Shown piece after piece: positions 3,560 to 28,269 of a stretch of DNA of 28,790 nt. The stretch lies in the NCBI RefSeq assembly GCF_006345805.1, contig NW_021833477.1:1-28790 (forward strand). Direction: 5' to 3'. A model generated the notes under the pieces. That model was given only the letters and a program-made list of their open reading frames with translations. It made no database searches and was not told where the DNA came from. Position numbers and translations under genes: made by a program. The number at the start of each line of letters is the position of its first letter. Position 1 is the first letter of the stretch. This DNA is from Octopus sinensis. Its lineage: Eukaryota.

Positions 3560-4624
3560 GCGTCGGTGGTGGTGGTGGTAGTGGTGTGAGGTAGCGTATT
3601 GTCCAGGTGCTACTGATAGTGGCGTTGGTGCTGGTGATGGTAGCATTGTTGTTGTTGTTGTTGATTTTGCTGGCGCAGGTGGCGGCGGTGGTGGTGGTGA
3701 TGATAGTGTGTGTGTGTGTGTGTGTGGGATGGCTAGTGATGGTGGTGGTAGTGAGTGTTATAGTTGTTGATAGTGGCGGCGGTGGTGATGGTGGTGGTGC
3801 TACTGATTCTGGTGGGGTGTGGTAATAATTTTGAGGATGAAGGTGGTGGTAATAGAAATAGTTTTAGGGGTAGTTGTATTTGTGGTGGTGGCAGTGTTGT
3901 TGTTAGTAGTAGTTGTGGTGGTGGTGGTGAAAGTAGTAGTAGTGGTGATAGTGCTGATAGTGGTGGTAGCAGTAGTAGTAGTAATAGTAGTAGCAGCAGC
4001 AGGGGTGAGAGTGGTGAAAGTAGTAGTAGCAGAATTAGTAGTAGTAGTATTAGTGATGGTGGTGGTGATAGCAGTAGTAGTAGTAATAGCGGTGTGGGGT
4101 AGTAGTAGCAGCAGCAGCAGCAGCAGCAGGGGTTGAGGTGGTTGGTATGATGGGCTGATGGTGGTCACGTGTGCTGAAGGCGACTATGTTAAAGTGTAGT
4201 GGTCACGTGTGATTTTGTGGTGACGGACAGCAGTTGTGAGCTATGATGTGACAAGCATATAATCAGGCAGTCCGACCATGACCATCCCATTAGATCATGT
4301 GACTACAATATCCATTGGATATTGTTCTTTTGAAAACGAGTTGGGGAGATTTGGTCACTGTTTCAAGTTCAGATCATGTGACAAGATCGAGACAACCACG
4401 TGGGTTTATGTAGTGGTAGTAGTGTCGGTGGTGGTGGTTGTAGTGATTGTGGTTTTGGTGGTGGTGCTGCTGCTTCTGATGATGGTGGTGGTGCTGATAG
4501 TGGTGAAAGTAGTAGTAGTAGTAGTGGTGGTGAAAGTAGTAGTAGTAGTAGTGGTGGTGGTGAAAGTAGTAGTAGTAGTGGTGGTGGTGAAAGTAGTAGT
4601 AGTAGTAGTGGTGGTGGTGGTGAA

Positions 4625-4657
<33 letters not shown>

Positions 4658-4870
4658 GAAAGTAGTAGTAGTAGTAGTAGTGGTGGTGGTGAAAGTAGTA
4701 GTAGTAGTAGTAGTGGTGGTGGTGAAGTAGTAGTAGTAGTAGTGGTGGTGGTGAAAGTAGTAGTAGTAGTGGTGGTGGTGAAAGTAGTAGTAGTAGTGGT
4801 GGTGGTGAAAGTAGTAGTAGTTGTTGTAGCGATGATGGTTGTTGTGGCGTTGGTGTTGGTTGTAGTGGTA
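3560..4870. repeat. (GTG/GTA/GCA)n trinucleotide field with a higher-order unit (GGT)n-GAAA-(GTA)n at ~4495-4820, interrupted by ~240 bp of unique sequence at 4160-4400
   Basis: Visible directly in the sequence. It accounts for the poly-V/poly-T/poly-S ORFs in the track. Confidence 0.95.
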
Positions 4871-4879
4871 GTCATTCAT

Positions 4880-5205
4880 GGTGAAAGCACGTGGCTTAGT
4901 GGTTAGGGTATTAAGCTCACGAACGTAAGGTCCTAAGGTCAATTCCCAGCGATGCCTTCTGTCCTTGAGCAAGACACTTTATTTCACGTAGATCCAGTCC
5001 CTTCAGCTGGCAAAAATGATTTGTACCAGTAATTCAAAGGGGCCAACCTCGTCACACTCTGTGTCGAGCTGAATCTCCCTGAGAACTACATTAGGGGTAC
5101 ACGTGTCTGTGGAGTACTCAGCCAGTTGCACGTTAATTTCACAAGTAGGATTTTTCCATTCAACGGATCAACTGGAACCCTCGTCGTCGCAACCGACGGA
5201 AAACC
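4880..5205 (+). mobile_element. tRNA-derived SINE, separate family
   Basis: tRNA-like head (GTGGCTTAGTGGTTAGGG A-box, degenerate GGTCAATTCCC B-box) followed by GTCCTTGAGCAAGACACTTTAT, a typical post-tRNA SINE segment. Ends CCCTCGTCGTCGCAACCGACGG. Confidence 0.7.
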
Positions 5206-5280
5206 AGACTATGAGTGATAGTGGTGGGGGGTGGCGTAGTGTGGTAGTAGTTACAGGTATGGTACTATAACGCAGTCCTT

Positions 5281-6011
5281 GTTCTCCCCCTCTTTCCATA
5301 TCTTTCTCTCCCTCTTACTCTTGCTCTCTCTCTCCATCTCTCTCTCTTTCCTTATCTTTCCTTCCCTCTTACTCTTGCTCTCTCCCCCTCTCTCCTTCTC
5401 TCTCTCTCTTTCTCTCTAGCTCTCCTCCATCTCCCTTCCCGTTCTCTCCTTCTACCCCTCTTTCCCTCTCCCTCTTGTCATCATCTCTCTCTCCCATCCT
5501 CTTGCTCCCGCTCTCTTTCTCTCCCCCTCCTTCCAACCTACACCTCCCCCAGTCTCCCTCTTCCTTCTCTCTTTCTACCGCTCTCTCACCGTTTCTTTCT
5601 CTATCTTCTCCTTCCCCCTCCGACCCTCCGACGCTTTCTTTCTCTCTCTTCCACCCCGTCTCTCTTCCTCCTCTCTCTCTCTCCCCTCTCTCTCTCCCCC
5701 CTCTCTCTCCCCTCTCTCTTTCACTCCCTTCCCCCTCTCTCTCTTTCACTCCCTTCCCCCTTCTCTCTCTTTCACTCCCTCCCTCTCTCTCCCACCGACT
5801 ATCTCTTCCACCCCACTCTCTCGTCCTCCTCTCTCTCTTCCCCTCTCTCTTTCACTCCTTCCCCCTATCTTCATCCGACTCTATCATCCACTCTAGTCTC
5901 TCTTCCTCCTCTGTCTTCCCCCTCTTTCTTCCCCCTCTTTCTCTCTCTTCCTCCTCTCTCTCTTCCCCGTCTCTCTCTCTTTCACCCTTCCCCCTCCCTT
6001 CCCCCTTCTCT
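5281..6011. repeat. ~730-bp polypyrimidine/polypurine tract
   Basis: Overwhelmingly C/T on the + strand, with recurring CTCTCTCTTTCACTCC sub-units. Confidence 0.95.
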
Positions 6012-6963: not shown

Positions 6964-7125
6964 GGGAGGGTGTGTGTGGTAAGTAGCTTGCTTATCAACC
7001 ACATGGTTCCGGGTTCAGTCCCACTGCGTGGCACTTTGGGCAATTGTCTTCTACTATAGCCTCGGGCCGACCAAAGCCTTGTGAGTGGATTTGGTAGACG
7101 GAAACTGAAAGAAGCCCATCATATA
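6964..7125 (+). mobile_element. OK-like SINE, 5' half
   Basis: Matches 6290-6450. Confidence 0.9.
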
Positions 7126-7139
7126 TATATATATAAATA

Positions 7140-7514
7140 GGCATAGGAGTGGCTGTGTGGTAAGTAGCTTGCTTATCAACCACATGGTTCCGGGTTCAGT
7201 CCCACTGCATGGCATCTTGGGCAAGTGTCTTCTGCTATAGCCCCGGGCCGACTAAAGCCTTGTCAGTGGATTTGGAAGACAGAAACTGAAAGAAGTCTGT
7301 CGTATATATATATATATATGTGTTTGTGTTTGTCCCCCAATATCGCTTGACAACCGATGTTGGTGTGTTTATATTCCTGTAACTTAGCGGTTCGGCAAAG
7401 AGACTGGTAGACTAAGTACTAGGCTTACAAAGAATAAGTTCTGAGGTCGATTTCTTCGTCTAAACGCGGTACTCCAGCAGGGCCGCTGTCAAATATCTAA
7501 AACAAGTAAAAGAA
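7140..7514 (+). mobile_element. Full-length OK-like SINE
   Basis: Matches 6286-6698 end to end. Confidence 0.92.
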
Positions 7515-11802: not shown

Positions 11803-12166
11803 TTATATATGCGGAGAAAATCCCTGGAGAAGGACATCATGCTCGGAATGGTCAGTGGCAAGAGAGGAAGAGGCCGACCAATGGAGAAGTTCTTAAGCAG
11901 ATCAGGCCGAAAATGTCGCTAGAAGCTAGGATCACCAAGCATAGATTGGCATATTTTGGTCATATTATGCGGAGAAAATCCCTGGAGGACATCATACTCG
12001 GAATGGTCAGTGGCAAGAGAGGAAGAGGCCGACTAAGAACCCGCTGGCTTGACACCATCAAGAGTGATACCGGAATGGACATAGCCAATCTGAAAGAAGC
12101 GGCCCAGGATAGAACTGACTGGAGGACACTGATCCAACGAGTGACCGAGAGTCGACTTCGACTGAG

Positions 12167-12209
<43 letters not shown>

Positions 12210-12583
12210 GGAATGGTCAGTGGCAAGAGAGGAAGAGGCCGACCAAGAACCCGCTGGCTTGACACCATCAAGAGTGATACCGGAATGGACATGGCCAGTC
12301 TGAAAGAAGCGGCCCAAGATAGAACTGACTGGAGGACACTGATCCAACGAGTGACCGAGAGTCGACTTCGACTGAGCGGATATATACATATGTATACGGA
12401 ATGGTCAATGGCAAGAGAGGAAGAGGCCGACCAAGAACCCACTGGCTTGACACCATCAGGAGTGATACCGGAATGGACATGGCCAGTCTGAAAGAAGCGG
12501 CCCAGGATAGAACTGACTGGAGGACGCTGATCCAACGAGTGACCGAGAGTCGACTTCGACTGAGCGGATAGAGAGAGAGAGAG
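11799..12583 (+). mobile_element. RTE-clade (BovB-like) LINE 3' end as one partial plus three tandem copies separated by (TA)n
   Basis: TNGEVLKQIRPKMSLEARITKHRLAYFGHIMRRKSLEDIILGMVSGKRGRGRLRTRWLDTIKSDTGMDIANLKEAAQDRTDWRTLIQRVTESRLRLSG matches the RTE/BovB ORF C-terminus pattern (YFGH.MRR..SLEK...LG...G.R.RGR...RWLD). Copies at 11799-11880, 11881-12170, 12208-12380 and 12396-12571. Only the last has the TAG stop and a (GA)n tail. Confidence 0.92.
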
Positions 12584-13894: not shown

Positions 13895-14357
13895 AACCAT
13901 GTTGTCCAAAATACATCAACAGATGCGTGGTCTCAAGCATTTGTCTTATGAAGAAAGGCTGAAGACGCTCGACCTTTATTCTCTAGAAAAACGACGACGC
14001 CGTGGTGATCTCATTCTTGCTCACATCATAAACGGAAAGTGTAACCTCTCGAAAGAGCTGTTCTTCACTCCTGCTCCAGAGCGTCGGCTGCGGGGTCATT
14101 CCGAAAAGCTCTATCTGCGACGATTTCATCTCAATCGAAGGAGAGGGGCTTTCTCCGTCCGGGTTGCGGATCCGTGGAATAAGCTGCCGGACGAGATAGT
14201 GAAGATGCTGACGACCGCTCGGTTCAAAGTCTCTCTTGACCAGAAATGGCCTGAACTCTTTGTATGACCACCCACCCTGTACATAACTCCATGTCTCCCT
14301 ACATGGCCTTGCTTTTTGCTTTTTGAGCCAAAAAATTAACTTAACTTAACTTAACTT
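13895..14357 (+). mobile_element. 5'-truncated CR1-clade LINE (ORF2 C-terminus, 3' UTR, (CTTAA)n tail)
   Basis: GLKHLSYEERLKTLDLYSLEKRRRRGDLI...RLRGHSEKL...RRGAFSVRVADPWNKLPDEIV...FKVSLD matches the CR1 signature YEERL..L.L.SLE.RR.RGDLI...RGH..KL...FS.RV...WN.LP. Stop at 14267; tail TTAACTTAACTTAACTTAACTT. Confidence 0.93.
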
Positions 14358-16042: not shown

Positions 16043-17817
16043 GTCTCCGCTCGTCCTCGCAAGCCTATGTATAATAAGCGCAACGGTTTAACAATAATAT
16101 GCGTCTCCGCTCATTCTCGCAAGCCTATGTATAATAGCGCAATGGTTTAGCAATAATATGCGTCTTCGCTCGTACTCGCAAGCCTATGTATAATAAGCGC
16201 AACGGTTTAACAATAATATGCGTCTCCGCTCATACTCGCAAGCCTATGTATAATAGCGCAATGGTTTAACAATAATATGCGTCTCCGCTCATACTCGCGA
16301 GCATATGTATAATAGCGCGATGGTTTAACAATAATATGCGTCTCCGCTCATACTCGCGAGCATATGTAGAATAGCGCAATGGTTTAACAATAATATGCGT
16401 CTCCGCTCATACTCGCGAGCATATGCAGAATAGCGCAACGGTTTAGCAATAATATGCGTCTCCGCTCATACTCGCGAGCATACGTAGAATAGCGCAACGG
16501 TTTAGCAATAATATGCGTCTCTGCTCATACTCGCGAGCATATATGTATAATAGCGCAATGGTTTAGCAATAATATGCGTCTCCGCTCATACTCGCGAGCA
16601 TATATGTATAATAGCGCAATGGTTTAGCAATAATATGCGTCTCTGCTCATACTCGCGAGCACATGTATAATAGCGCAATGGTTTAGCAATAATATGCGTC
16701 TCTGCTCATACTCGCGAGCATATATGTATAATAGCGCAATGGTTTAGCAATAATATGCGTCTCTGCTCATACTCGCGAGCACATGTATAATAGCGCAATG
16801 GTTTAGCAATAATATGCGTCTCCGCTCATACTCGCGAGCATACGTAGAATAGCGCAACGGTTTAGCAATAATATGCGTCTCTGCTCATACTCGCGAGCAT
16901 ATGTAGAATAGCGCAACGGTTTAGCAATAATATGCGTCTCTGCTCATACTCGCGAGCATATGTATAATAGCGCGATGGTTTAACAATAATATGCGTCTCT
17001 GCTCATACTCGCGAGCATATGTAGAATAGCGCAATGGTTTAACAATAATATGCGTCTCTGCTCATACTCGCGAGCATATGTAGAATAGCGCAATGGTTTA
17101 GCAATAATATGCGTCTCTGCTCATACTCGCGAGCATATGTAGAATAGCGCAACGGTTTAGAAATAATATGCGTCTCCGCTCATACTCGCGAGCATATGTA
17201 GAATAGCGCAATGGTTTAACAATAATATGCGTCTCCGCTCATACTCGCAAGAATATGTAGAATAGCGCAACGGTTTAGCAATAATATGCGTCTTCGCTCA
17301 TACTCGCGAGCACATGTCTAATAAGCGCAATGGTTGAACAATAATATGCGTCTCCGCTCATACTCACGAGCATATGTAGAATAGCGCAACGGTTTAGCAA
17401 TAATATGCGTCTCCGCTCATACTCGCGAGCATATGTATAATAGGCGCGATGGTTTAGCAATAATATGCGTCTCCGCTCATACTCGCAAGCATATGTATAA
17501 TAGGCGCAATGGTTTAGCAATAATATGCGTCTCGGCTCATACTCGCAAGCATATGTAGAATAGCGCAATGGTTTAGCAATAATATGCGTCTTCGCTCATA
17601 CTCGCGAGCACATGTCTAATAAGCGCAATGGTTGAACAATAATATGCGTCTCCGCTCATACTCACGAGCATATGTATAATAGCGCAATGGTTTAGCAATA
17701 ATATGCGTCTCCGCTCATACTCGCAAGCCTATGTATAATAGCGCAATGGTTTAGCAATAATATGCGTCTCTGCTCATACTCGCGAGCATATGTAGAATAA
17801 GCGCAATGGTTTAACAA
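16043..17817. repeat. Minisatellite, ~59-bp unit, about 30 copies
   Basis: Consensus AATATGCGTCTCCGCTCATACTCGCGAGCATATGTAGAATAGCGCAATGGTTTAGCAAT (59 nt); 1775 bp / 59 is about 30 units. Confidence 0.97.
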
Positions 17818-18100: not shown

Positions 18101-18693
18101 ATATATATATATATAGATATATATATATAATATATATATATACATATATATACATAAATACATATATATACATATATATATATAATAAAAATACATATAT
18201 TATATATATATAAAATACATATATATTATATATATAAATACATATATATATATATATTAAATACATATATATATATATATTAAATACATATATATATATT
18301 ATATAAATACATATATATATATATAATATAAATACATATATATAATAATATATATATAAATAATATATATATATATATAAATACATATATATAATATATA
18401 TATATATATATATAATAACATATATATTATATAAATACATATATATATATATATATATATAAATACATATATATATATATATAAATACATATATATATAT
18501 ATATATAAATACATATATATATATATATATATATAAATACATATATATATATATATATATATAAATACATATATATAATATATATATAAAATACATATAT
18601 ATATCTATATATATATTATATATATATATATCTATATATATATATATAATAAATACATATATATCTATATATATAATATATATATATATATAT

Positions 18694-18726
<33 letters not shown>

Positions 18727-18971
18727 TATATAATACATATATATATATATATATATAATACATATATATATATATATATTAAATACATATATATTATATA
18801 TATATAATATATATATATACATATATAAATACATATTATATATATATACATATATAATACATATATATATATATACATATATAATACTATATATATATAT
18901 ATTATAAATACATATATATATAATATATATATATATACACACATATATACATATATAATACATATATAAAT

Positions 18972-19015
<44 letters not shown>

Positions 19016-19058
19016 TACATATTTACACACATATATATACATATATATACACACACAC
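18101..19058. repeat. ~950-bp (TA)n-based array with a recurring AAATAC(AT)n sub-unit
   Basis: Nearly pure A/T. AAATACATATAT recurs with variable TA lengths. Confidence 0.95.
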
Positions 19059-21229: not shown

Positions 21230-21262
<33 letters not shown>

Positions 21263-21265
<3 letters not shown>

Positions 21266-21579
21266 AATTATGGATCTACGACGACATAGCAAGTCTCCTT
21301 ATATATATATATACATATATAAATTATTGATTCTACGACGACATAGCAAGTCTCCTTTATATATATATATATATATATAATATATATATATATTATATAC
21401 ATATATATAAATATGGATTCTACGACGACATAGCAAGTCTCCTTTATATATACATATATATATAATATATATATATACAATATATAAATTATGGATTCTA
21501 CGACGACATAGCAAGTCTCCTTTATATATATATATAACATATATAAATTATGGATTCTACGACGACAAGCAAGTCTCCT

Positions 21580-21613
<34 letters not shown>

Positions 21614-21769
21614 TAAATTATGGATTCTACGACGACATAGCAAGTCTCCTTTATATATAATATATATATACATATATAAATTATGGATTCTACGACGACA
21701 TAGCAAGTCTCCTTTATATATATAAATACATATATAAATTATGGATTCTACGACGACATAGCAAGTCTC

Positions 21770-21811
<42 letters not shown>

Positions 21812-21918
21812 GTATATAAATTATGGATTCTACGACGACATAGCAAGTCTCCTTTATATATATATATATATGCACATATATAAATTATGGATTCTACGAC
21901 GACATAGCAAGTCTCCTT
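21263..21918. repeat. Array of 10 copies of a ~39-bp core separated by variable (TA)-rich spacers
   Basis: Core ATAAATTATGGATTCTACGACGACATAGCAAGTCTCCTT at ~21263, 21319, 21407, 21484, 21543, 21613, 21676, 21734, 21816 and 21880. The last copy runs into unique sequence. Confidence 0.97.
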
Positions 21919-22312
21919 TCTTTGCGTTCAGAAGCTTTAGTTATTTAACCGTTCTTGTGATTTTCTTGAACTAGAGCGAGAGAGAGAGAGAGAGAGAGGA
22001 ATGGTGAGGAAAAAATAAGGAAAGAGAGGACGAATGAATTAGGAGACTGGACATTGATATTATCGCTAATTCATTTAATTATCATTTTATCACTCACGAA
22101 AATTATTCTTGAATTCTCTACAATTTTTTCTGTCTTTAAGTATAATTAATTCCATTACGAAAAAAAAAAGAAAGGACACAAAAAATGTTTTTCATTTGAA
22201 TATTATTATTATTACAAAATATTTTTCAAATTTTATTGTCTTAAATAAATATAAGGAATAAATTAATAAATAGATAAATACATACTACGTATGTGTATAT
22301 ATATATATATAT

Positions 22313-24588: not shown

Positions 24589-24876
24589 TTAGTGCATAGT
24601 AATCTCTTGGTAATTTTCGCGACATCGGAACTGGATATCTATGTCTTTGACTGGTGGAAGGATTTCGTGTCCATGGTAGCTGATATCAAGTTCGGCCGTC
24701 TGTCCATTACAAATGTACATTTCAAATTTGTTTATTTGGCTTACGAGGTACCACTTGGCTTGGAGAATTGCGTAACGCTTGCCAGGGCAGAGTGTGCCAA
24801 AGGTCATAATTGGATTCTTCAGCTGTTTACCATTCTTGTAGAACTTCTGATCGACAAAGCGGTCATATTTGTAATC
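24589..24876 (-). CDS. CYP7/CYP8-clan cytochrome P450, coding exon 4 (heme-binding Cys, stop)
   Basis: Acceptor TTTTTCCAG|GAT at 24876. DYKYDRF (PERF region), MTFGTLCPGKRYA (heme Cys), GHEILPP (compare CYP7A1 GLGILPP). TAA at 24591-24589; 288 nt. Confidence 0.95.
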   Translation of the reverse strand, partial: DYKYDRFVDQKFYKNGKQLKNPIMTFGTLCPGKRYAILQAKWYLVSQINKFEMYICNGQTAELDISYHGHEILPPVKDIDIQFRCRENYQEITMH

Positions 24877-25180
24877 CTGGAAAAAACAATGAAAGAAAAA
24901 AATTAATAAAACAGATATACACATACATGTACAAAATATATACTTTCATATATAATTCAATTCTCATTAGCAAAACCGCGATCGCTACTGCACGAGAAAT
25001 ATACTACTAATATATTTGTCTCCGTTTTTAACAATGTACGTCCACAAGAGAGATCAACTCGAGAAGAACAGAGTTTTGTCAATCTGTATTTACTTTAAGT
25101 ATGATACTTTAAGTATGATACACGGCAAAAGGTCCTTAAGAGAAAAAAGTCCCAGGGTTTCTATCTTTATTTTTAGATAT

Positions 25181-25476
25181 CACGTGATCACGTGACCGAC
25201 CAGTCCATCAGATGTAGTTACACATCGCTGGTCACAATGCGTTCGCATTGTTTTAGCCTTCGAATGACGCCACCCCGCTGGCTAAGCGAGCAGGCCAACA
25301 GAAGAAAGAGTGGTGAAAGAGTACAGCAGGGATCGCCACCACCCCCTGCTGGAGACTCGTGAAGCTTTTAGGTGTTTTCTCTCAATAAACACTCACAACG
25401 CCCTGTCTGGGAATCAAAACCGCGATCCTACGACCGCGAGTCCGCTGCCCTAACCACTGGGCCATTGCGCCACCAC
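25181..25476 (-). mobile_element. OR-like SINE (tail type 1) in P450 intron 3 with a 12-bp TSD
   Basis: Reverse complement of the 9916-10217 family. ATTTTTAGATAT is duplicated at 25169-25180 and 25477-25488. Confidence 0.92.
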
Positions 25477-25559
25477 ATTTTTAGATATACTAGGGAAGAT
25501 CTGTCTAACTAAGTCCTTGAAGGAGGTGTAAAAGATAAAAGAAAATATTGAAAACATAC

Positions 25560-25738
25560 CATAGGATCTTCAAAGATTTCAGGGTCTTTATGAATGGCTG
25601 GTGGATAAACAGCGACTCTGTCACCTTTTCGGACAAGAAACGTTTGACCGTTGTTCATTTTGAAATTGCAGTCCTCGTTGACGTAACGTACCATGAAAAC
25701 TCCACTGCACAATCGTAAGGTCTCGCTGTTGATGCTGT
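25560..25738 (-). CDS. CYP7/CYP8-clan cytochrome P450, coding exon 3
   Basis: Acceptor TTACAG|AC (phase 1), donor ATG|GTATG (phase 0), 179 nt. DSINSETLRLCSG (ExxR), RKGDRVAVYPPAIHKDPEIFEDP (compare CYP7A1 RKDDIIALYPQLMHLDPEIYPDP). Confidence 0.95.
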
Positions 25739-25838
25739 CTGTAAGGGAAAGAGACAAAAGAAAATTATCAATATGAGTTTAGGGTTGGCATTCGAACGAA
25801 ATAAGAGACTTGTTACGTTCGAAACAAAAGATAATTAC

Positions 25839-25959
25839 TAACTTAATCACACCGGTGCGAAACATTAGGCGGATTGTTCACAAACACACACACATGCCTA
25901 ACTTAATCACACCAGTGCGAAACATTAGGCGGATTGTTCACAAACATACATACACATGC
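25839..25959. repeat. 60-bp tandem duplication in P450 intron 2
   Basis: TAACTTAATCACACCrGTGCGAAACATTAGGCGGATTGTTCACAAACA.ACA.ACATGC starts at 25839 and 25899. Confidence 0.95.
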
Positions 25960-26004
25960 GTACCTACGAGAAAATGCGCAGCAGAAATAAAATCATATTC
26001 GGAC

Positions 26005-26310
26005 GCTTTGTAGCTACGTGATTTCAGGTTCAATCCCGTTGCCTCGCACCTGGGTAAAAGTGTCTACTATATTGCCTTGAGGCTGACGATCAGTGCCTTG
26101 CGAGTGAAATTGGTAGACAGAAACTATGAAGAAGCCCATCGTGCATGTTTGTTCATGTTCTTGTTAACCTCGCTGTTCGGCAAAACGTGACCGATAAAAT
26201 AAGGTACAAGAAACACGCAACTGGGGTCGATTTGTCCGACCAACCCATTCAAGGCGGTGGGTGTCCTCAGCATGGCCGCAAGTCCAGTGAAGGGATCAAA
26301 TAAAATACAA
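26005..26310 (+). mobile_element. Old, diverged OK-related SINE in P450 intron 2
   Basis: GGTTCAATCCC B-box, TGGTAGACAGAAACT..GAAGCCCATCGT, CTGTTCGGCAAAA..GACCGATAAAATAAG, GGGGTCGATTTG, CAGCATGGCCGCA. Confidence 0.75.
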
Positions 26311-26409
26311 GACACGTGGCAACCCAGACTGTTCGGAAGACTTGGAAAGCACTAAAAACATACACACAAGAATTTACCCACAATGCACCGTAAATTCAAA
26401 AGTACTTAC

Positions 26410-27428
26410 CGAGAACTGGCATTTCTTCGATTTCTTTAATGCTGAAGACAACAGGCCCAGTTTCGTCACTAGCACGTGACTCCATTTTTTTGCGAATCAT
26501 ACCGGAAACTTCGTTTTTAAGTGCATCGTAAGCTTCTCTGTGGCTTAGCAGGAAATACATATTCCAGAAAGACAGACGAAATGTGTTGTAGTTGACGTGT
26601 AAATAGACCAAGTTGTGACCCATAATATCTTGTTCTGATTGGCCATGAGCAAGCATAAATTCAGTAGAGTAGCGTATATAGTCGGATAAATCTTCACGGG
26701 CGAGAATTTTCTTGGAAGACGGTTGTTTGCAGAGAACGGTGAGGGCTTCGATGGCTTTTGGAAATAGTTTGATGGGCAAGCCAAGCCAGAGGTAGTTGAA
26801 ATAACGGTGGAATACATCGAAACAATGATAGACGGTTTGCGGTTCAAAAACCTGATCGTCACTGCGACCGAAAATCGTGTAAAACATGGCTGCGAAATTC
26901 GTTTTGGAAACGAACTTTCTGAGTCCGTCAGTTTCCTGACAGTGGCTCTTGGCATCGTTGTTGTTGTTGTTGTTGTTGACAAGAGCATTGCTTTTGTCAG
27001 TGTTGTTGTTGCTATCTTCATCATTCTTAATGCAGCCGTTGTTCTTGTTGTTGTTACCCTGCGAGACTTTGTTAAAGGCCTCGTCTAAATGGACCGCATA
27101 CCGTCGCATTTCTGTGACCAAGTGAGAACCCCGGACGCGTTTTCCAGCCTCCTTGATCATTTTACGGGCATTGACAAGGACGAAACTGAAGACGTTCATG
27201 TTAACCTGCTTCTGGATCGGGTCGAAATCGAAACACTTTTCACGGCTCATAGCCTCCACGCTGTGCGGGTCGGCGATGATCGTCAACCGCTGATGAAAGA
27301 ATCGGATAGTGAAAATGTCGCCATGGTTCTTTTGGCTATCGTGTAAGAATTTAATGGCATCGTTCTTGAACTGCTCACCGTTTCCCCATATCATGTGACC
27401 GGGGACAATTGGGGGTTCACCCTTCCGC
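26410..27428 (-). CDS. CYP7/CYP8-clan cytochrome P450, coding exon 2
   Basis: Acceptor TTCCTCCAG|G (phase 2), donor CTCG|GTAAGT (phase 1), 1019 nt open. RKGEPPIVPGHMIWGNG..F (proline hinge), HGDIFTI, TIFGR, LWLGLPIKLF, NTFRLSFW and EMPVL all parallel CYP7A1. Confidence 0.95.
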
Positions 27429-28195
27429 CTGGAGGAAAAAAAAAATTAATAGAATAATTAAGAAATTAAGAAACGAGATCATTACAAAAATAAAATAGGA
27501 AAGTAAATTATTGTAGCAAGAAGTAGTACTCAATACATGTGAATTAGTCTTATTTTGTATTCGAATCCTTATGAAGTTAATATATCGGTGCGTGTGTATG
27601 TGTGTGTGTGCACACTTTGATTATTTTCGAGTACAGCGATTCTCAAACGCGTTTGTTGGAAGTCGATATGTACAGGGCGTGGATATGGAAATTGTATGAC
27701 AAAGGAACTGGAGTTACGTAAACACTTTTAAACTTCGCATACTGGTAGAATGTGTTTATAAAACATCTTTTTCTCTTGGCTTTACTGAGAAAATTCTATA
27801 GTCTGTAAGATATTTGTCGTTTATTTTCTTCAATTTCTGCAATTTCAACCAATCAATGACGTCCATTGAGGTGAAAAAACATTCTGTGCCTTATGAATAT
27901 GTCCCTCGTTTAAGAAACAGATTGGGTTTATTTACATTTCTGAAGAAAAAAAGACACCCTTCCCCCCCTAACTAACCCCAAAACAGATTGAAATGCAATA
28001 GATCGATACTAGGGTCATAATTATGGGTGACAATTTCACATGACACCGCTAGAAAAAACTGCCGTTCAAACCGAAAAGATCCCCGTGCGTTTCTTGTACG
28101 ATCATATACTACACACACATGTAATATATATATTCAATTAAATTAATGAAAGAGCGATTGATTAATTGAAAGTGTTTGATTAATTAGTAACTTAC

Positions 28196-28269
28196 CTTCT
28201 TCTGTAACAAAAGCGTTTGTAGTAGGCCATAGATAAGATAACAACGAGGGCCAACAGGTAGATAAACAT
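28196..28269 (-). CDS. CYP7/CYP8-clan cytochrome P450, coding exon 1 (ER membrane anchor)
   Basis: ATG at 28269-28267. MFIYLLALVVILSMAYYKRFCYRR is a hydrophobic anchor followed by basic stop-transfer residues. Donor AG|GTAAG at 28195 (phase 2) joins exon 2 in frame. Total CDS 74+1019+179+288=1560 nt = 519 aa plus stop. Confidence 0.88.

What the first reader, a model, noticed from the sequence alone, without database searches (positions are those of the whole stretch)
24589..28269. CYP7-clan P450 with deletions in both catalytic signature regions
Seen: the heme loop is MTFGTLCPG (F to C spans 5 residues) instead of FxxGxxxCxG (8 residues; human CYP7A1 PFGSGATICPG, from memory), a 3-residue deletion. 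The I-helix reads LVYLHVNYNTFRLSFW against CYP7A1 LVVLWASQANTIPATFW, one residue shorter, with no AGxxT-type groove and His in place of Trp. The ORF, ExxR motif, axial Cys and splice sites are all intact, so it does not look like a pseudogene. Established: changes in the Cys pocket and I-helix mark non-monooxygenase P450s such as CYP8A1 (prostacyclin synthase), CYP5A1 and CYP74. Inference: this may be an invertebrate subfamily with altered chemistry (endoperoxide or hydroperoxide isomerase, or unusual sterol oxidation) rather than a cholesterol 7-alpha-hydroxylase.
Basis: partly seen in the sequence, partly recalled or inferred. Interest (0 to 1): 0.7.

Follow-up and report, generated by a model that had tools for sequence, protein, structure and literature searches.

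The report
Octopus CYP3067 P450, short heme loop
This is an intact octopus gene for an enzyme of the cytochrome P450 family CYP3067; its odd heme-binding loop and active-site helix are real, are shared by all its relatives in molluscs, worms and allied phyla, and were already noted in 2014, but what the enzyme does is still untested.

Summary
A clean 4-exon gene on the minus strand (24589-28269) encodes a 519-aa P450. It is identical to the RefSeq model 'prostacyclin synthase-like isoform X1' of Octopus sinensis.

- **Cys loop:** the stretch before the heme cysteine is 3 residues shorter than in CYP7A1, CYP8B1 and CYP8A1 in all five alignments.
- **I-helix:** it is 1 residue shorter in three of four alignments, and it keeps its Asn-Thr pair.
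- **Not decay or error:** 54 full-length homologues from molluscs, annelids, nemerteans, a brachiopod, a bryozoan and a flatworm all have FG[STAV][LIA]C with no indel. LHVNYNTFR is the most conserved run in the family. Short-loop proteins form one clade (support 100).
- **Already named:** the Capitella orthologue is CYP3067A1 (clan 7). Dejong and Wilson 2014 printed the same two gaps and called them peculiar. The octopus protein is 51.5% identical to it.
- **New here:** the Trp-Asp-Arg 'low ceiling' network of CYP7/CYP8 enzymes is replaced at all three positions, by His, His and Tyr.

The retained Asn-Thr pair, which prostacyclin synthase has lost, argues against prostacyclin-synthase-like chemistry. 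The likeliest function is a reductase-dependent lipid or sterol monooxygenase that is not a CYP7A1 equivalent, but this is untested. It is an ordinary member of a known, uncharacterised family.

The parts
28196..28269 (-). Exon 1: ATG and the N-terminal membrane anchor (aa 1-21 at 28207-28269), ending in phase 2
   Evidence: GT donor, ORF. (helix 2-21). (100% match to P0001).
26410..27428 (-). Exon 2 (aa 25-365): most of the P450 domain, including the F-helix and the I-helix
   Evidence: 332-aa ORF, AG acceptor and GT donor..
26948..27043 (-). Asn-rich low-complexity insert (aa 154-185), found only in octopods and predicted to be disordered
   Evidence: pLDDT below 50 for 154-185. (absent in P0003 and P0004, expanded in Argonauta P0002). 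Coordinates.
26807..26809 (-). Codon of His232 in the F-helix (FHRYFNYLWLGLP). It occupies the position of the Asp in the clan's Trp-Asp-Arg network.
   Evidence: alignment. (H in 54 of 54). (D in 65 of 72 relatives, H in 21 of 24 family rows)..
26576..26617 (-). I-helix signature HNLVYLHVNYNTFR (aa 296-309). It holds the invariant His302 (26597-26599) and the retained Asn306-Thr307 (26582-26587). The clan's ceiling Trp is absent.
   Evidence: LHVNYNTFR is the longest run that is at least 90% conserved..
25560..25738 (-). Exon 3 (aa 366-424): K-helix with ExxR (ETLR, 25713-25724) and the beta-sheet region
24589..24876 (-). Exon 4 (aa 425-519 plus the TAA stop): meander, Cys loop, L-helix and C-terminal sheet
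24856..24870 (-). Meander motif KYDRF (aa 427-431), the clan-7 form of PERF
   Evidence: (FKYDR is listed for CYP3067A1).
24781..24801 (-). Shortened Cys-ligand loop FGTLCPG (aa 450-456), with the axial Cys454 at 24787-24789
   Evidence: 3-residue gap; the length is invariant in the family.
24652..24678 (-). YHGHEILPP (aa 491-499). Tyr491 sits where the clan has the network Arg. GHEILPP is the second most conserved run in the family.
   Evidence: R in 65 of 72 relatives against Y in 16 of 24; G in 68 of 72 against E495 in 23 of 24.

Best explanation
The gene is the Octopus sinensis member of the P450 family CYP3067 (clan 7). This is an old family, conserved across molluscs, annelids and allied phyla (Spiralia), and its function has never been characterised.

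Shown here:
- The gene is intact and under purifying selection. It encodes an N-terminally anchored protein with a confident CYP7-like fold, the Cys ligand, ExxR and the meander.
- Its 3-residue-shorter Cys loop and its remodelled I-helix are features of the whole family and arose once. They are not damage.

Inferred:
- It is a working heme-thiolate enzyme. It most likely still uses O2 and NADPH-P450 reductase as a monooxygenase, because it keeps the Asn-Thr pair of CYP7A1, CYP7B1 and CYP8B1 and a microsomal anchor.
- It probably acts on a sterol-like or other lipid substrate held differently from cholesterol in CYP7A1. The Trp-Asp-Arg network that sets the low ceiling over the heme in CYP7/CYP8 enzymes is replaced by His302, His232 and Tyr491.

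My confidence differs by part:
- Family membership and a functional gene: about 0.9.
- A monooxygenase that is not CYP7A1-equivalent: about 0.5.
For: Gene model and identity.

P450 fold and clan: Pfam 7e-29. PDB by sequence gives CYP7A1 2e-52, CYP8B1 8e-43 and CYP8A1 1e-38. AlphaFold2 gives mean pLDDT 90.9 and pTM 0.89. Foldseek puts CYP7A1 first, with a TM-score of 0.86 normalised to the target.

Conservation: 54 homologues show no indel in the loop, and HNLV[YF]LHVNYNTFR is nearly invariant.

Single origin: among representatives of 1.84 billion proteins, the short loop occurs only in the top-scoring group. That group is one clade with SH-aLRT 100.

Family name: P0030 has exactly the motif positions printed for CYP3067A1. 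The octopus protein is 51.5% identical to it.

Selection: Argonauta has the same four exons and phases. dN is 0.083 and the proportion of synonymous differences is 0.84, which is saturated.

Asn-Thr pair: kept in 51 of 54 members. It is lost in prostacyclin synthase.

Network swap.

Expression: the 2014 paper reports EST support for the Capitella gene.
Against: - No biochemical data exist for any member. CYP3067 appears in only one paper of the library.
- The Cys loop is the least confident part of the core model. The 10-residue block 451-460 has pLDDT 83, and no coordinates were available to inspect its geometry.
- An invariant His near the distal face together with an altered proximal loop is also what one might expect of an enzyme that acts on peroxides.
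- Sterol as the substrate is argued only from clan membership.
- Placement of the I-helix gap depends on the alignment method.
Confidence: 0.55

Rival explanations
1. It is a heme-thiolate enzyme that is not a monooxygenase. The shortened proximal loop and the invariant distal His302 would adapt the family to rearrange or cleave lipid peroxides or endoperoxides, or to use peroxide as the oxidant. It would need no O2 or reductase, by analogy with CYP8A1, CYP5A1 and CYP74.
For: - Both signature regions differ from every other clan-7 relative, and the differences have been fixed since the family began.
- An invariant His replaces the ceiling Trp that lies about 8 A above the iron in CYP8B1.
- RefSeq names the protein prostacyclin synthase-like.
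- From established knowledge: CYP74 enzymes have an altered Cys loop and need no reductase.
Against: - Asn306-Thr307 is retained, as in the monooxygenases CYP7A1, CYP7B1 and CYP8B1. Prostacyclin synthase has N-M-G in human and N-A-G in frog.
- The CYP74 change is an insertion, not a deletion (from memory).
- Prostacyclin synthase has a loop of canonical length, WGxGxxxC[LV]G.
- The RefSeq name is an automatic best-hit label. CYP7A1 scores higher.
Confidence: 0.2
2. It is the functional equivalent of vertebrate CYP7A1 or CYP7B1, a sterol or oxysterol 7-alpha-hydroxylase, as many database names for its relatives imply. The motif changes would be neutral for chemistry and substrate.
For: - CYP7A1 is the best solved relative by sequence and by fold.
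- Many orthologues are labelled CYP7A1-like.
- The N-T pair is kept.
- From memory, not checked here: bile-acid-type intermediates were reported in octopus optic glands (Wang et al. 2022, Current Biology).
Against: - Identity is only 26-33%.
- The tree does not place the family inside the chordate CYP7/CYP8 clade.
- The Trp is absent, although a W283F change in CYP7A1 abolishes the spectral response to cholesterol and W281F in CYP8B1 cuts kcat six-fold. Its Asp and Arg partners are replaced as well.
Confidence: 0.12
3. It is a non-catalytic or regulatory heme protein, a P450 fold kept for binding or sensing rather than turnover.
For: - Both catalytic signatures are unusual.
- Dejong and Wilson questioned whether CYP3067A1 is fully functional.
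Against: The strongest conservation lies exactly on the distal I-helix face, the Cys ligand, ExxR and the substrate-recognition stretch SGVFM. That is the pattern expected of an active enzyme.
Confidence: 0.08
4. It is a decaying copy, or the result of a sequencing or annotation error.
For: The gene lies alone on a repeat-rich 28.8-kb record, and its motifs are atypical.
Against: - The ORF is intact and the splice sites are canonical.
- Argonauta has the same exon structure and low dN.
- The same motifs occur in 54 homologues from six phyla and in independent assemblies and transcript contigs.
Confidence: 0.02

Closest known systems
CYP3067A1 of Capitella teleta (Dejong and Wilson 2014, PMC4229089)
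   Same: - The sequences are 51.5% identical.
- The short loop is the same, AFGS...LCPG against TFGT...LCPG.
- The I-helix core is the same, HVNYNTFR, and the meander is the same, FKYDR.
- Both fall in the single short-loop clade.
   Different: - It comes from a different phylum.
- Identity is below 55%, so under the nomenclature rule it would be a different subfamily.
- The octopus protein carries an Asn-rich insert (aa 154-185).
- Neither protein has a known function.
CYP7A1, cholesterol 7-alpha-hydroxylase (PDB 3SN5, 3DAX, 3V8D)
   Same: - It is the best solved match by sequence (2e-52) and by fold (target-normalised TM-score 0.86).
- Both have an ER anchor, the N-T pair in the I-helix, the FYxNG hairpin, the xYDRF meander and a CPG after the Cys.
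   Different: - Identity is 26-33%.
- The Cys loop here is 3 residues shorter.
- The ceiling Trp283 is absent and its Asp and Arg partners are replaced by His and Tyr.
- The segment before FYKNG is 4-6 residues shorter.
CYP8B1, sterol 12-alpha-hydroxylase (PDB 7LYX)
   Same: It is in the same clan, has the same fold, and keeps the Asn-Thr pair.
   Different: CYP8B1 has the W281-D210-R479 network and a loop of canonical length.
CYP8A1, prostacyclin synthase (PDB 2IAG, 3B6H). This is the RefSeq label of the octopus protein.
   Same: It is in the same clan and has the same fold (target-normalised TM-score about 0.85).
   Different: - Prostacyclin synthase has a canonical-length loop, WGxGxxxC[LV]G.
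- It keeps the ceiling Trp.
- It has lost the I-helix Thr.
- Identity is 23-28%.
CYP74 allene oxide synthase and hydroperoxide lyase (PDB 3DAM, 2RCH)
   Same: It is a P450 with a Cys loop of non-canonical length. It gives weak sequence hits (4.6e-10 and 1.7e-4).
   Different: From memory, the CYP74 loop carries an insertion rather than a deletion, and CYP74 lacks the I-helix Thr. It belongs to a different clan.

Membership tests
Cytochrome P450 superfamily | Match to Pfam PF00067 above the curated cut-off | tested here: met
   101.3 bits against a cut-off of 22.8, E=7.4e-29.
Cytochrome P450 superfamily | Axial Cys in a CxG context at the start of the L-helix, the K-helix ExxR, and the meander | tested here: met
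   C454-P-G is followed by helix 457-474. ETLR lies at 370-373 and KYDRF at 427-431. C454, E370 and R373 are invariant in 54 sequences.
Cytochrome P450 superfamily | Canonical spacing FxxGxxxCxG, with 8 residues from F to C | tested here: not met
   The sequence is FGTLCPG, 5 residues from F to C. All alignments give a 3-residue gap.
P450 clan 7 (CYP7, CYP8, CYP39 and allies) | Closest relatives by sequence and by fold are clan-7 enzymes | tested here: met
   CYP7A1, CYP8B1 and CYP8A1 lead both the PDB sequence search and the Foldseek list. CYP51 and CYP3A follow far behind. The 2014 paper places CYP3067A1 with the CYP7s.
P450 clan 7 (CYP7, CYP8, CYP39 and allies) | I-helix Trp 'low ceiling' with its Asp and Arg partners | tested here: not met
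   Trp is present in 68 of 72 relatives and 0 of 24 family rows. Asp becomes His232 and Arg becomes Tyr491.
CYP7 family (CYP7A1, CYP7B1) | At least 40% identity under the nomenclature rule (established convention) | tested here: not met
   Identity is 33% to fish CYP7A1 P0142 and 32% to CYP7B1 P0135, and 26% to human CYP7A1 by Foldseek.
CYP7 family (CYP7A1, CYP7B1) | Sterol 7-alpha-hydroxylase activity | not testable with these tools
   This needs the recombinant enzyme with reductase and sterol substrates.
CYP8A1 (prostacyclin synthase) | At least 40% identity, a WGxGxxxC[LV]G loop, and an I-helix without Thr (N-M/A-G) | tested here: not met
   Identity is 28% to frog prostacyclin synthase P0180 and 23-24% to human. 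The loop here is FGTLCPG and N-T is retained.
CYP3067 family | At least 40% identity to the type member CYP3067A1 | tested here: met
   Identity to P0030 is 51.5% over 487 aligned positions. P0030 has the motif positions printed for CYP3067A1: 286, 344, 400 and 424.
CYP3067 family | Short heme loop (FGS...LCPG) and a gapped I-helix ending in NT | tested here: met
CYP3067 family | Falls inside the clade that contains CYP3067A1 | tested here: met
   The 24 short-loop rows, including P0001 and P0030, form one clade with SH-aLRT 100 on a stem of 0.72. This comes from a quick IQ-TREE search with a midpoint root.
CYP74 (allene oxide synthase type) | Insertion in the Cys loop and loss of the I-helix Thr (from memory) | tested here: not met
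   The loop is shorter, not longer, and the Thr is kept.

The most novel reading that the evidence does not exclude
CYP3067 enzymes would be a Spiralia-wide class of heme-thiolate catalysts whose chemistry is set by two linked inventions. One is a Cys-ligand loop three residues shorter than in any characterised P450, which would change the thiolate environment and reductase docking. The other is a His-His-Tyr cluster in place of the Trp-Asp-Arg ceiling, which would put an acid-base His over the iron. Such an enzyme could work on lipid hydroperoxides or endoperoxides, or as a peroxygenase, without NADPH-P450 reductase. It would then make a signalling lipid or sterol that is not yet known in molluscs and annelids.
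Probability: 0.15. Interest if true: 0.7.

Novelty: new member of a known kind. Interest (0 to 1): 0.35.

Why it matters
This family is one of the few animal P450 families with a Cys-ligand loop of non-canonical length. The feature has been held fixed across six phyla, so it is functional rather than accidental.

- **For P450 enzymology:** it is a natural experiment on how much the proximal loop and the I-helix can change while a heme-thiolate enzyme survives.
- **For mollusc and annelid biology:** clan 7 makes bile acids, oxysterols and prostacyclin in vertebrates. This is the obvious candidate for sterol or lipid-mediator metabolism in animals whose steroid and oxysterol pathways are poorly defined.
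- **For annotation:** the database labels 'prostacyclin synthase-like' and 'CYP7A1-like' are not justified by the sequence.

The octopus gene adds nothing beyond being one more orthologue.

Tried and rejected
**Pseudogene or assembly error.** Rejected.

**An ungapped reading of the loop.** This would align P-I-M-T-F-G-T-L-C with P-F-G-S-G-A-T-I-C and move the 3-residue loss upstream of the Pro.
- It cannot be excluded without a structure.
- It is disfavoured because all five alignments anchor on FG.
- Six members still read PFG or PYG directly before the two residues that precede the Cys. They include the nemertean, leech, bryozoan and flatworm sequences.

**Model geometry.** The AlphaFold2 model gave no coordinates to the scripts. 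Loop geometry and His302-to-iron distances could not be measured.

**dN/dS against Argonauta.** Synonymous sites are saturated (0.84), so only dN and a qualitative ratio far below 1 can be stated.

**Relationship to the chordate families.** The tree does not resolve how CYP3067 relates to chordate CYP7/CYP8. The grouping with two Ciona P450s has support 0.

**Literature searches that gave nothing on function:**
- molluscan CYP7A1 and oxysterols;
- octopus and prostacyclin synthase;
- CYP7A1-like in bivalves;
- octopus optic-gland steroids, where only CYP27-type enzymes are mentioned;
- a 2025 review of molluscan endocrinology, which never mentions CYP7.

**Other negative results.** ARAGORN and Rfam found nothing in the window. 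Pfam found nothing convincing in three ORFs tested outside the gene, two of which look retroelement-like.


Full report
**What is there.**
The region 24589-28269 holds one gene on the minus strand. Its four exons are 28269-28196, 27428-26410, 25738-25560 and 24876-24589. All have GT..AG borders and join into a 1560-nt ORF of 519 aa. The product is identical over its full length to the RefSeq model 'prostacyclin synthase-like isoform X1 [Octopus sinensis]'. The only contig on record for that protein is 28,790 bases long, so the window is that whole record. Pfam calls the protein a P450 (E=7e-29).

Its closest solved relatives by sequence are CYP7A1 (2e-52), CYP8B1 (8e-43) and prostacyclin synthase CYP8A1 (1e-38). 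An AlphaFold2 model built on 54 homologues is confident, with mean pLDDT 90.9 and pTM 0.89. Only the Asn-rich stretch 154-185 falls below 50, and the block holding the Cys loop scores 83. Foldseek gives the same three enzymes first, with target-normalised TM-scores of 0.83-0.86, well ahead of CYP51 and CYP3A.

**The observation.**
The heme-ligand region reads NPIMTFGTLCPGKRYA. Five alignments were made:
- HMMER against each of the three solved relatives;
- MAFFT L-INS-i on 96 sequences;
- a profile-profile comparison of the family against chordate CYP7/CYP8.

All five put a 3-residue gap between FG and TLCPG. Wherever the gap is placed, the Cys lies 14 residues after the Gly of the conserved FYKNG hairpin, against 17 in CYP7A1.

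For the I-helix, three alignments give a 1-residue gap: HMMER against CYP8B1, MAFFT and hhalign. HMMER against CYP7A1 gives none.

- The lack of AGxxT is common to the whole clan, which reads W-A-S-Q-A-N-T.
- The Asn-Thr pair at the catalytic position is kept here as N306-T307.

ExxR, the axial Cys and the splice sites are intact as stated.

**Is it decay, error, or a family trait?**
The word-indexed search returned 268 relatives at E up to 1e-10. I aligned 54 full-length ones from molluscs, annelids, nemerteans, a brachiopod, a bryozoan and a flatworm.
- Not one has an indel in the loop. F450 is present in 53 of 54, and G451 and C454 in 54 of 54.
- LHVNYNTFR (301-309) is the longest run of positions at least 90% conserved in the whole protein. 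GHEILPP (493-499) is second.

An exhaustive HMMER search of 1.84 billion cluster representatives found the short loop only in the top-scoring group. Every other full-length relative in which a loop could be read has the 10-residue [FWY]GxGxxxC-x-G. On a maximum-likelihood tree of 96 proteins, the short-loop rows form one clade with SH-aLRT 100 on a long stem, so loop length changes once.

The Argonauta hians orthologue has the same four exons and phases. dN is 0.083 outside the low-complexity insert, while synonymous sites are saturated.

**It already has a name.**
Dejong and Wilson (2014, PMC4229089) annotated the P450 complement of the annelid Capitella teleta. The nomenclature committee named one clan-7 gene CYP3067A1.
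- Their tables print its motifs as '....NT', 'AFGS...LCPG', 'ESFR' and 'FKYDR'.
[quoted passage not shown] - My hit P0030, from Capitella, has those motifs at exactly the printed residue numbers.
- The octopus protein is 51.5% identical to it.

By the usual convention (at least 40% for a family, at least 55% for a subfamily; established knowledge), this is a CYP3067 of another subfamily. CYP3067 occurs in no other paper of the library. I found no functional work on it.

**What this analysis adds.**
The CYP8B1 structure paper (PMC9463588) describes an I-helix Trp that lies over the iron as a 'low ceiling'.
- The residue is W281 in CYP8B1 and W283 in CYP7A1. It is also present in CYP8A1, CYP7B1 and CYP39A1.
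- It is tied to an F-helix acidic residue and a surface Arg.
- W283F in CYP7A1 abolishes the spectral response to cholesterol, and W281F in CYP8B1 cuts kcat six-fold.

In the 96-sequence alignment (A1 counts):

| Position | Long-loop relatives | CYP3067 clade (24 rows) |
|---|---|---|
| Ceiling Trp | 68 of 72 | 0 of 24 |
| Asp, here His232 | Asp in 65 of 72 | His in 21 of 24 (54 of 54 in A1) |
| Arg, here Tyr491 | Arg in 65 of 72 | Tyr in 16 of 24 |
| Nearby Gly, here Glu495 | Gly in 68 of 72 | Glu in 23 of 24 |
| Asn306 | 71 of 72 | 24 of 24 |
| Thr307 | 63 of 72 | 19 of 24 (51 of 54 in A1) |

The family therefore changed the proximal loop and the whole distal ceiling network together. It kept the Asn-Thr pair.

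**How it most likely works.**
Shown: an anchored clan-7 P450 fold with the Cys ligand, ExxR and the meander, under strong constraint that is centred on the distal I-helix face.

Inferred: it binds heme through Cys454 and is catalytically active. The Asn-Thr pair is what the O2-activating members CYP7A1, CYP7B1 and CYP8B1 have. Prostacyclin synthase, which needs neither O2 nor reductase, has lost the Thr: it reads N-M-G in human and N-A-G in frog. I therefore favour a reductase-dependent monooxygenase.

Because the sterol-positioning Trp network is gone, I do not expect it to copy CYP7A1. A sterol, oxysterol or other lipid held in a taller or differently shaped pocket is the best guess.

The effect of the shorter loop on thiolate hydrogen-bonding, redox potential or reductase docking is unknown. 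The tools gave no coordinates to examine it.

**Rivals.**
- *Peroxide or endoperoxide isomerase, or peroxygenase.* This remains possible (about 0.2). An invariant His over the heme and an altered proximal loop would suit it. Retention of the Thr and the lack of any likeness to the prostacyclin synthase or CYP74 signatures weigh against it.
- *A true CYP7A1 equivalent.* About 0.12. It is weakened by 26-33% identity and the lost Trp network.
- *A non-catalytic heme protein.* About 0.08. It fits poorly with conservation that is focused on catalytic elements.
- *Decay or error.* Excluded for practical purposes.

**Verdict.**
The suggestion of isomerase chemistry is not supported by the one residue pair that distinguishes prostacyclin synthase from its monooxygenase cousins. 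The double gap was published twelve years ago for the annelid orthologue. The octopus gene is an ordinary member of the named but uncharacterised family CYP3067. The family remains a reasonable target for enzymology, which is why the score is not lower.

Noticed in passing
window 26948-27043 (aa 154-185): An Asn-rich low-complexity insert, encoded by AAC/AAT-type repeats, sits inside the P450 domain. It is predicted to be disordered (pLDDT below 50). It is absent from the two other cephalopod-like homologues P0003 and P0004 and is about 100 residues long in Argonauta hians.
   Followed up: partly
window 16043-17817: A 59-bp minisatellite with about 30 copies at 93% identity.
   Followed up: no
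window 18101-19049: About 950 bp of (AT)n, which explains the 6% GC value in the composition profile. Further AT-rich 58-129-bp satellite arrays lie at 21244-21919.
   Followed up: no
window 11998-12570 and 13899-14267: A tandemly duplicated 188-210-bp unit lies inside an ORF that reads GRGRPRTRWLDTIKSDTGM...DRTDWRTLI. A separate 122-aa ORF lies at 13899-14267. From memory, both look like C-terminal remnants of non-LTR retrotransposon ORF2. Pfam found no significant family.
   Followed up: partly
window 25405-25475 (intron 3, minus strand), 6973-7316 and about 26000-26100: tRNA-like and SINE-like sequences (GGTGGCGCAATGG...GGTTTTGATTCCCAG, and GGTTC.GTCCC...GGGCAAGTGTCTTCTACTATAGCC types). ARAGORN and Rfam called nothing. 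They are probably cephalopod SINE copies.
   Followed up: partly
window 25838-25954 (intron 2): A 60-bp unit present as two tandem copies at 94-95% identity.
   Followed up: no
window 3764-5981: Long (AGT)n with a 27-mer period, and CT-rich arrays with extreme GC skew. These produce the long spurious ORFs in all frames.
   Followed up: no
P0122 (Owenia fusiformis, 923 aa): This annelid protein model scores 1e-100 against the query but has a canonical-length loop (YGGGSSMCPG) in its C-terminal half. It may be a fused gene model or the nearest long-loop relative, and it is worth including in a rooted clan-7 tree.
   Followed up: no
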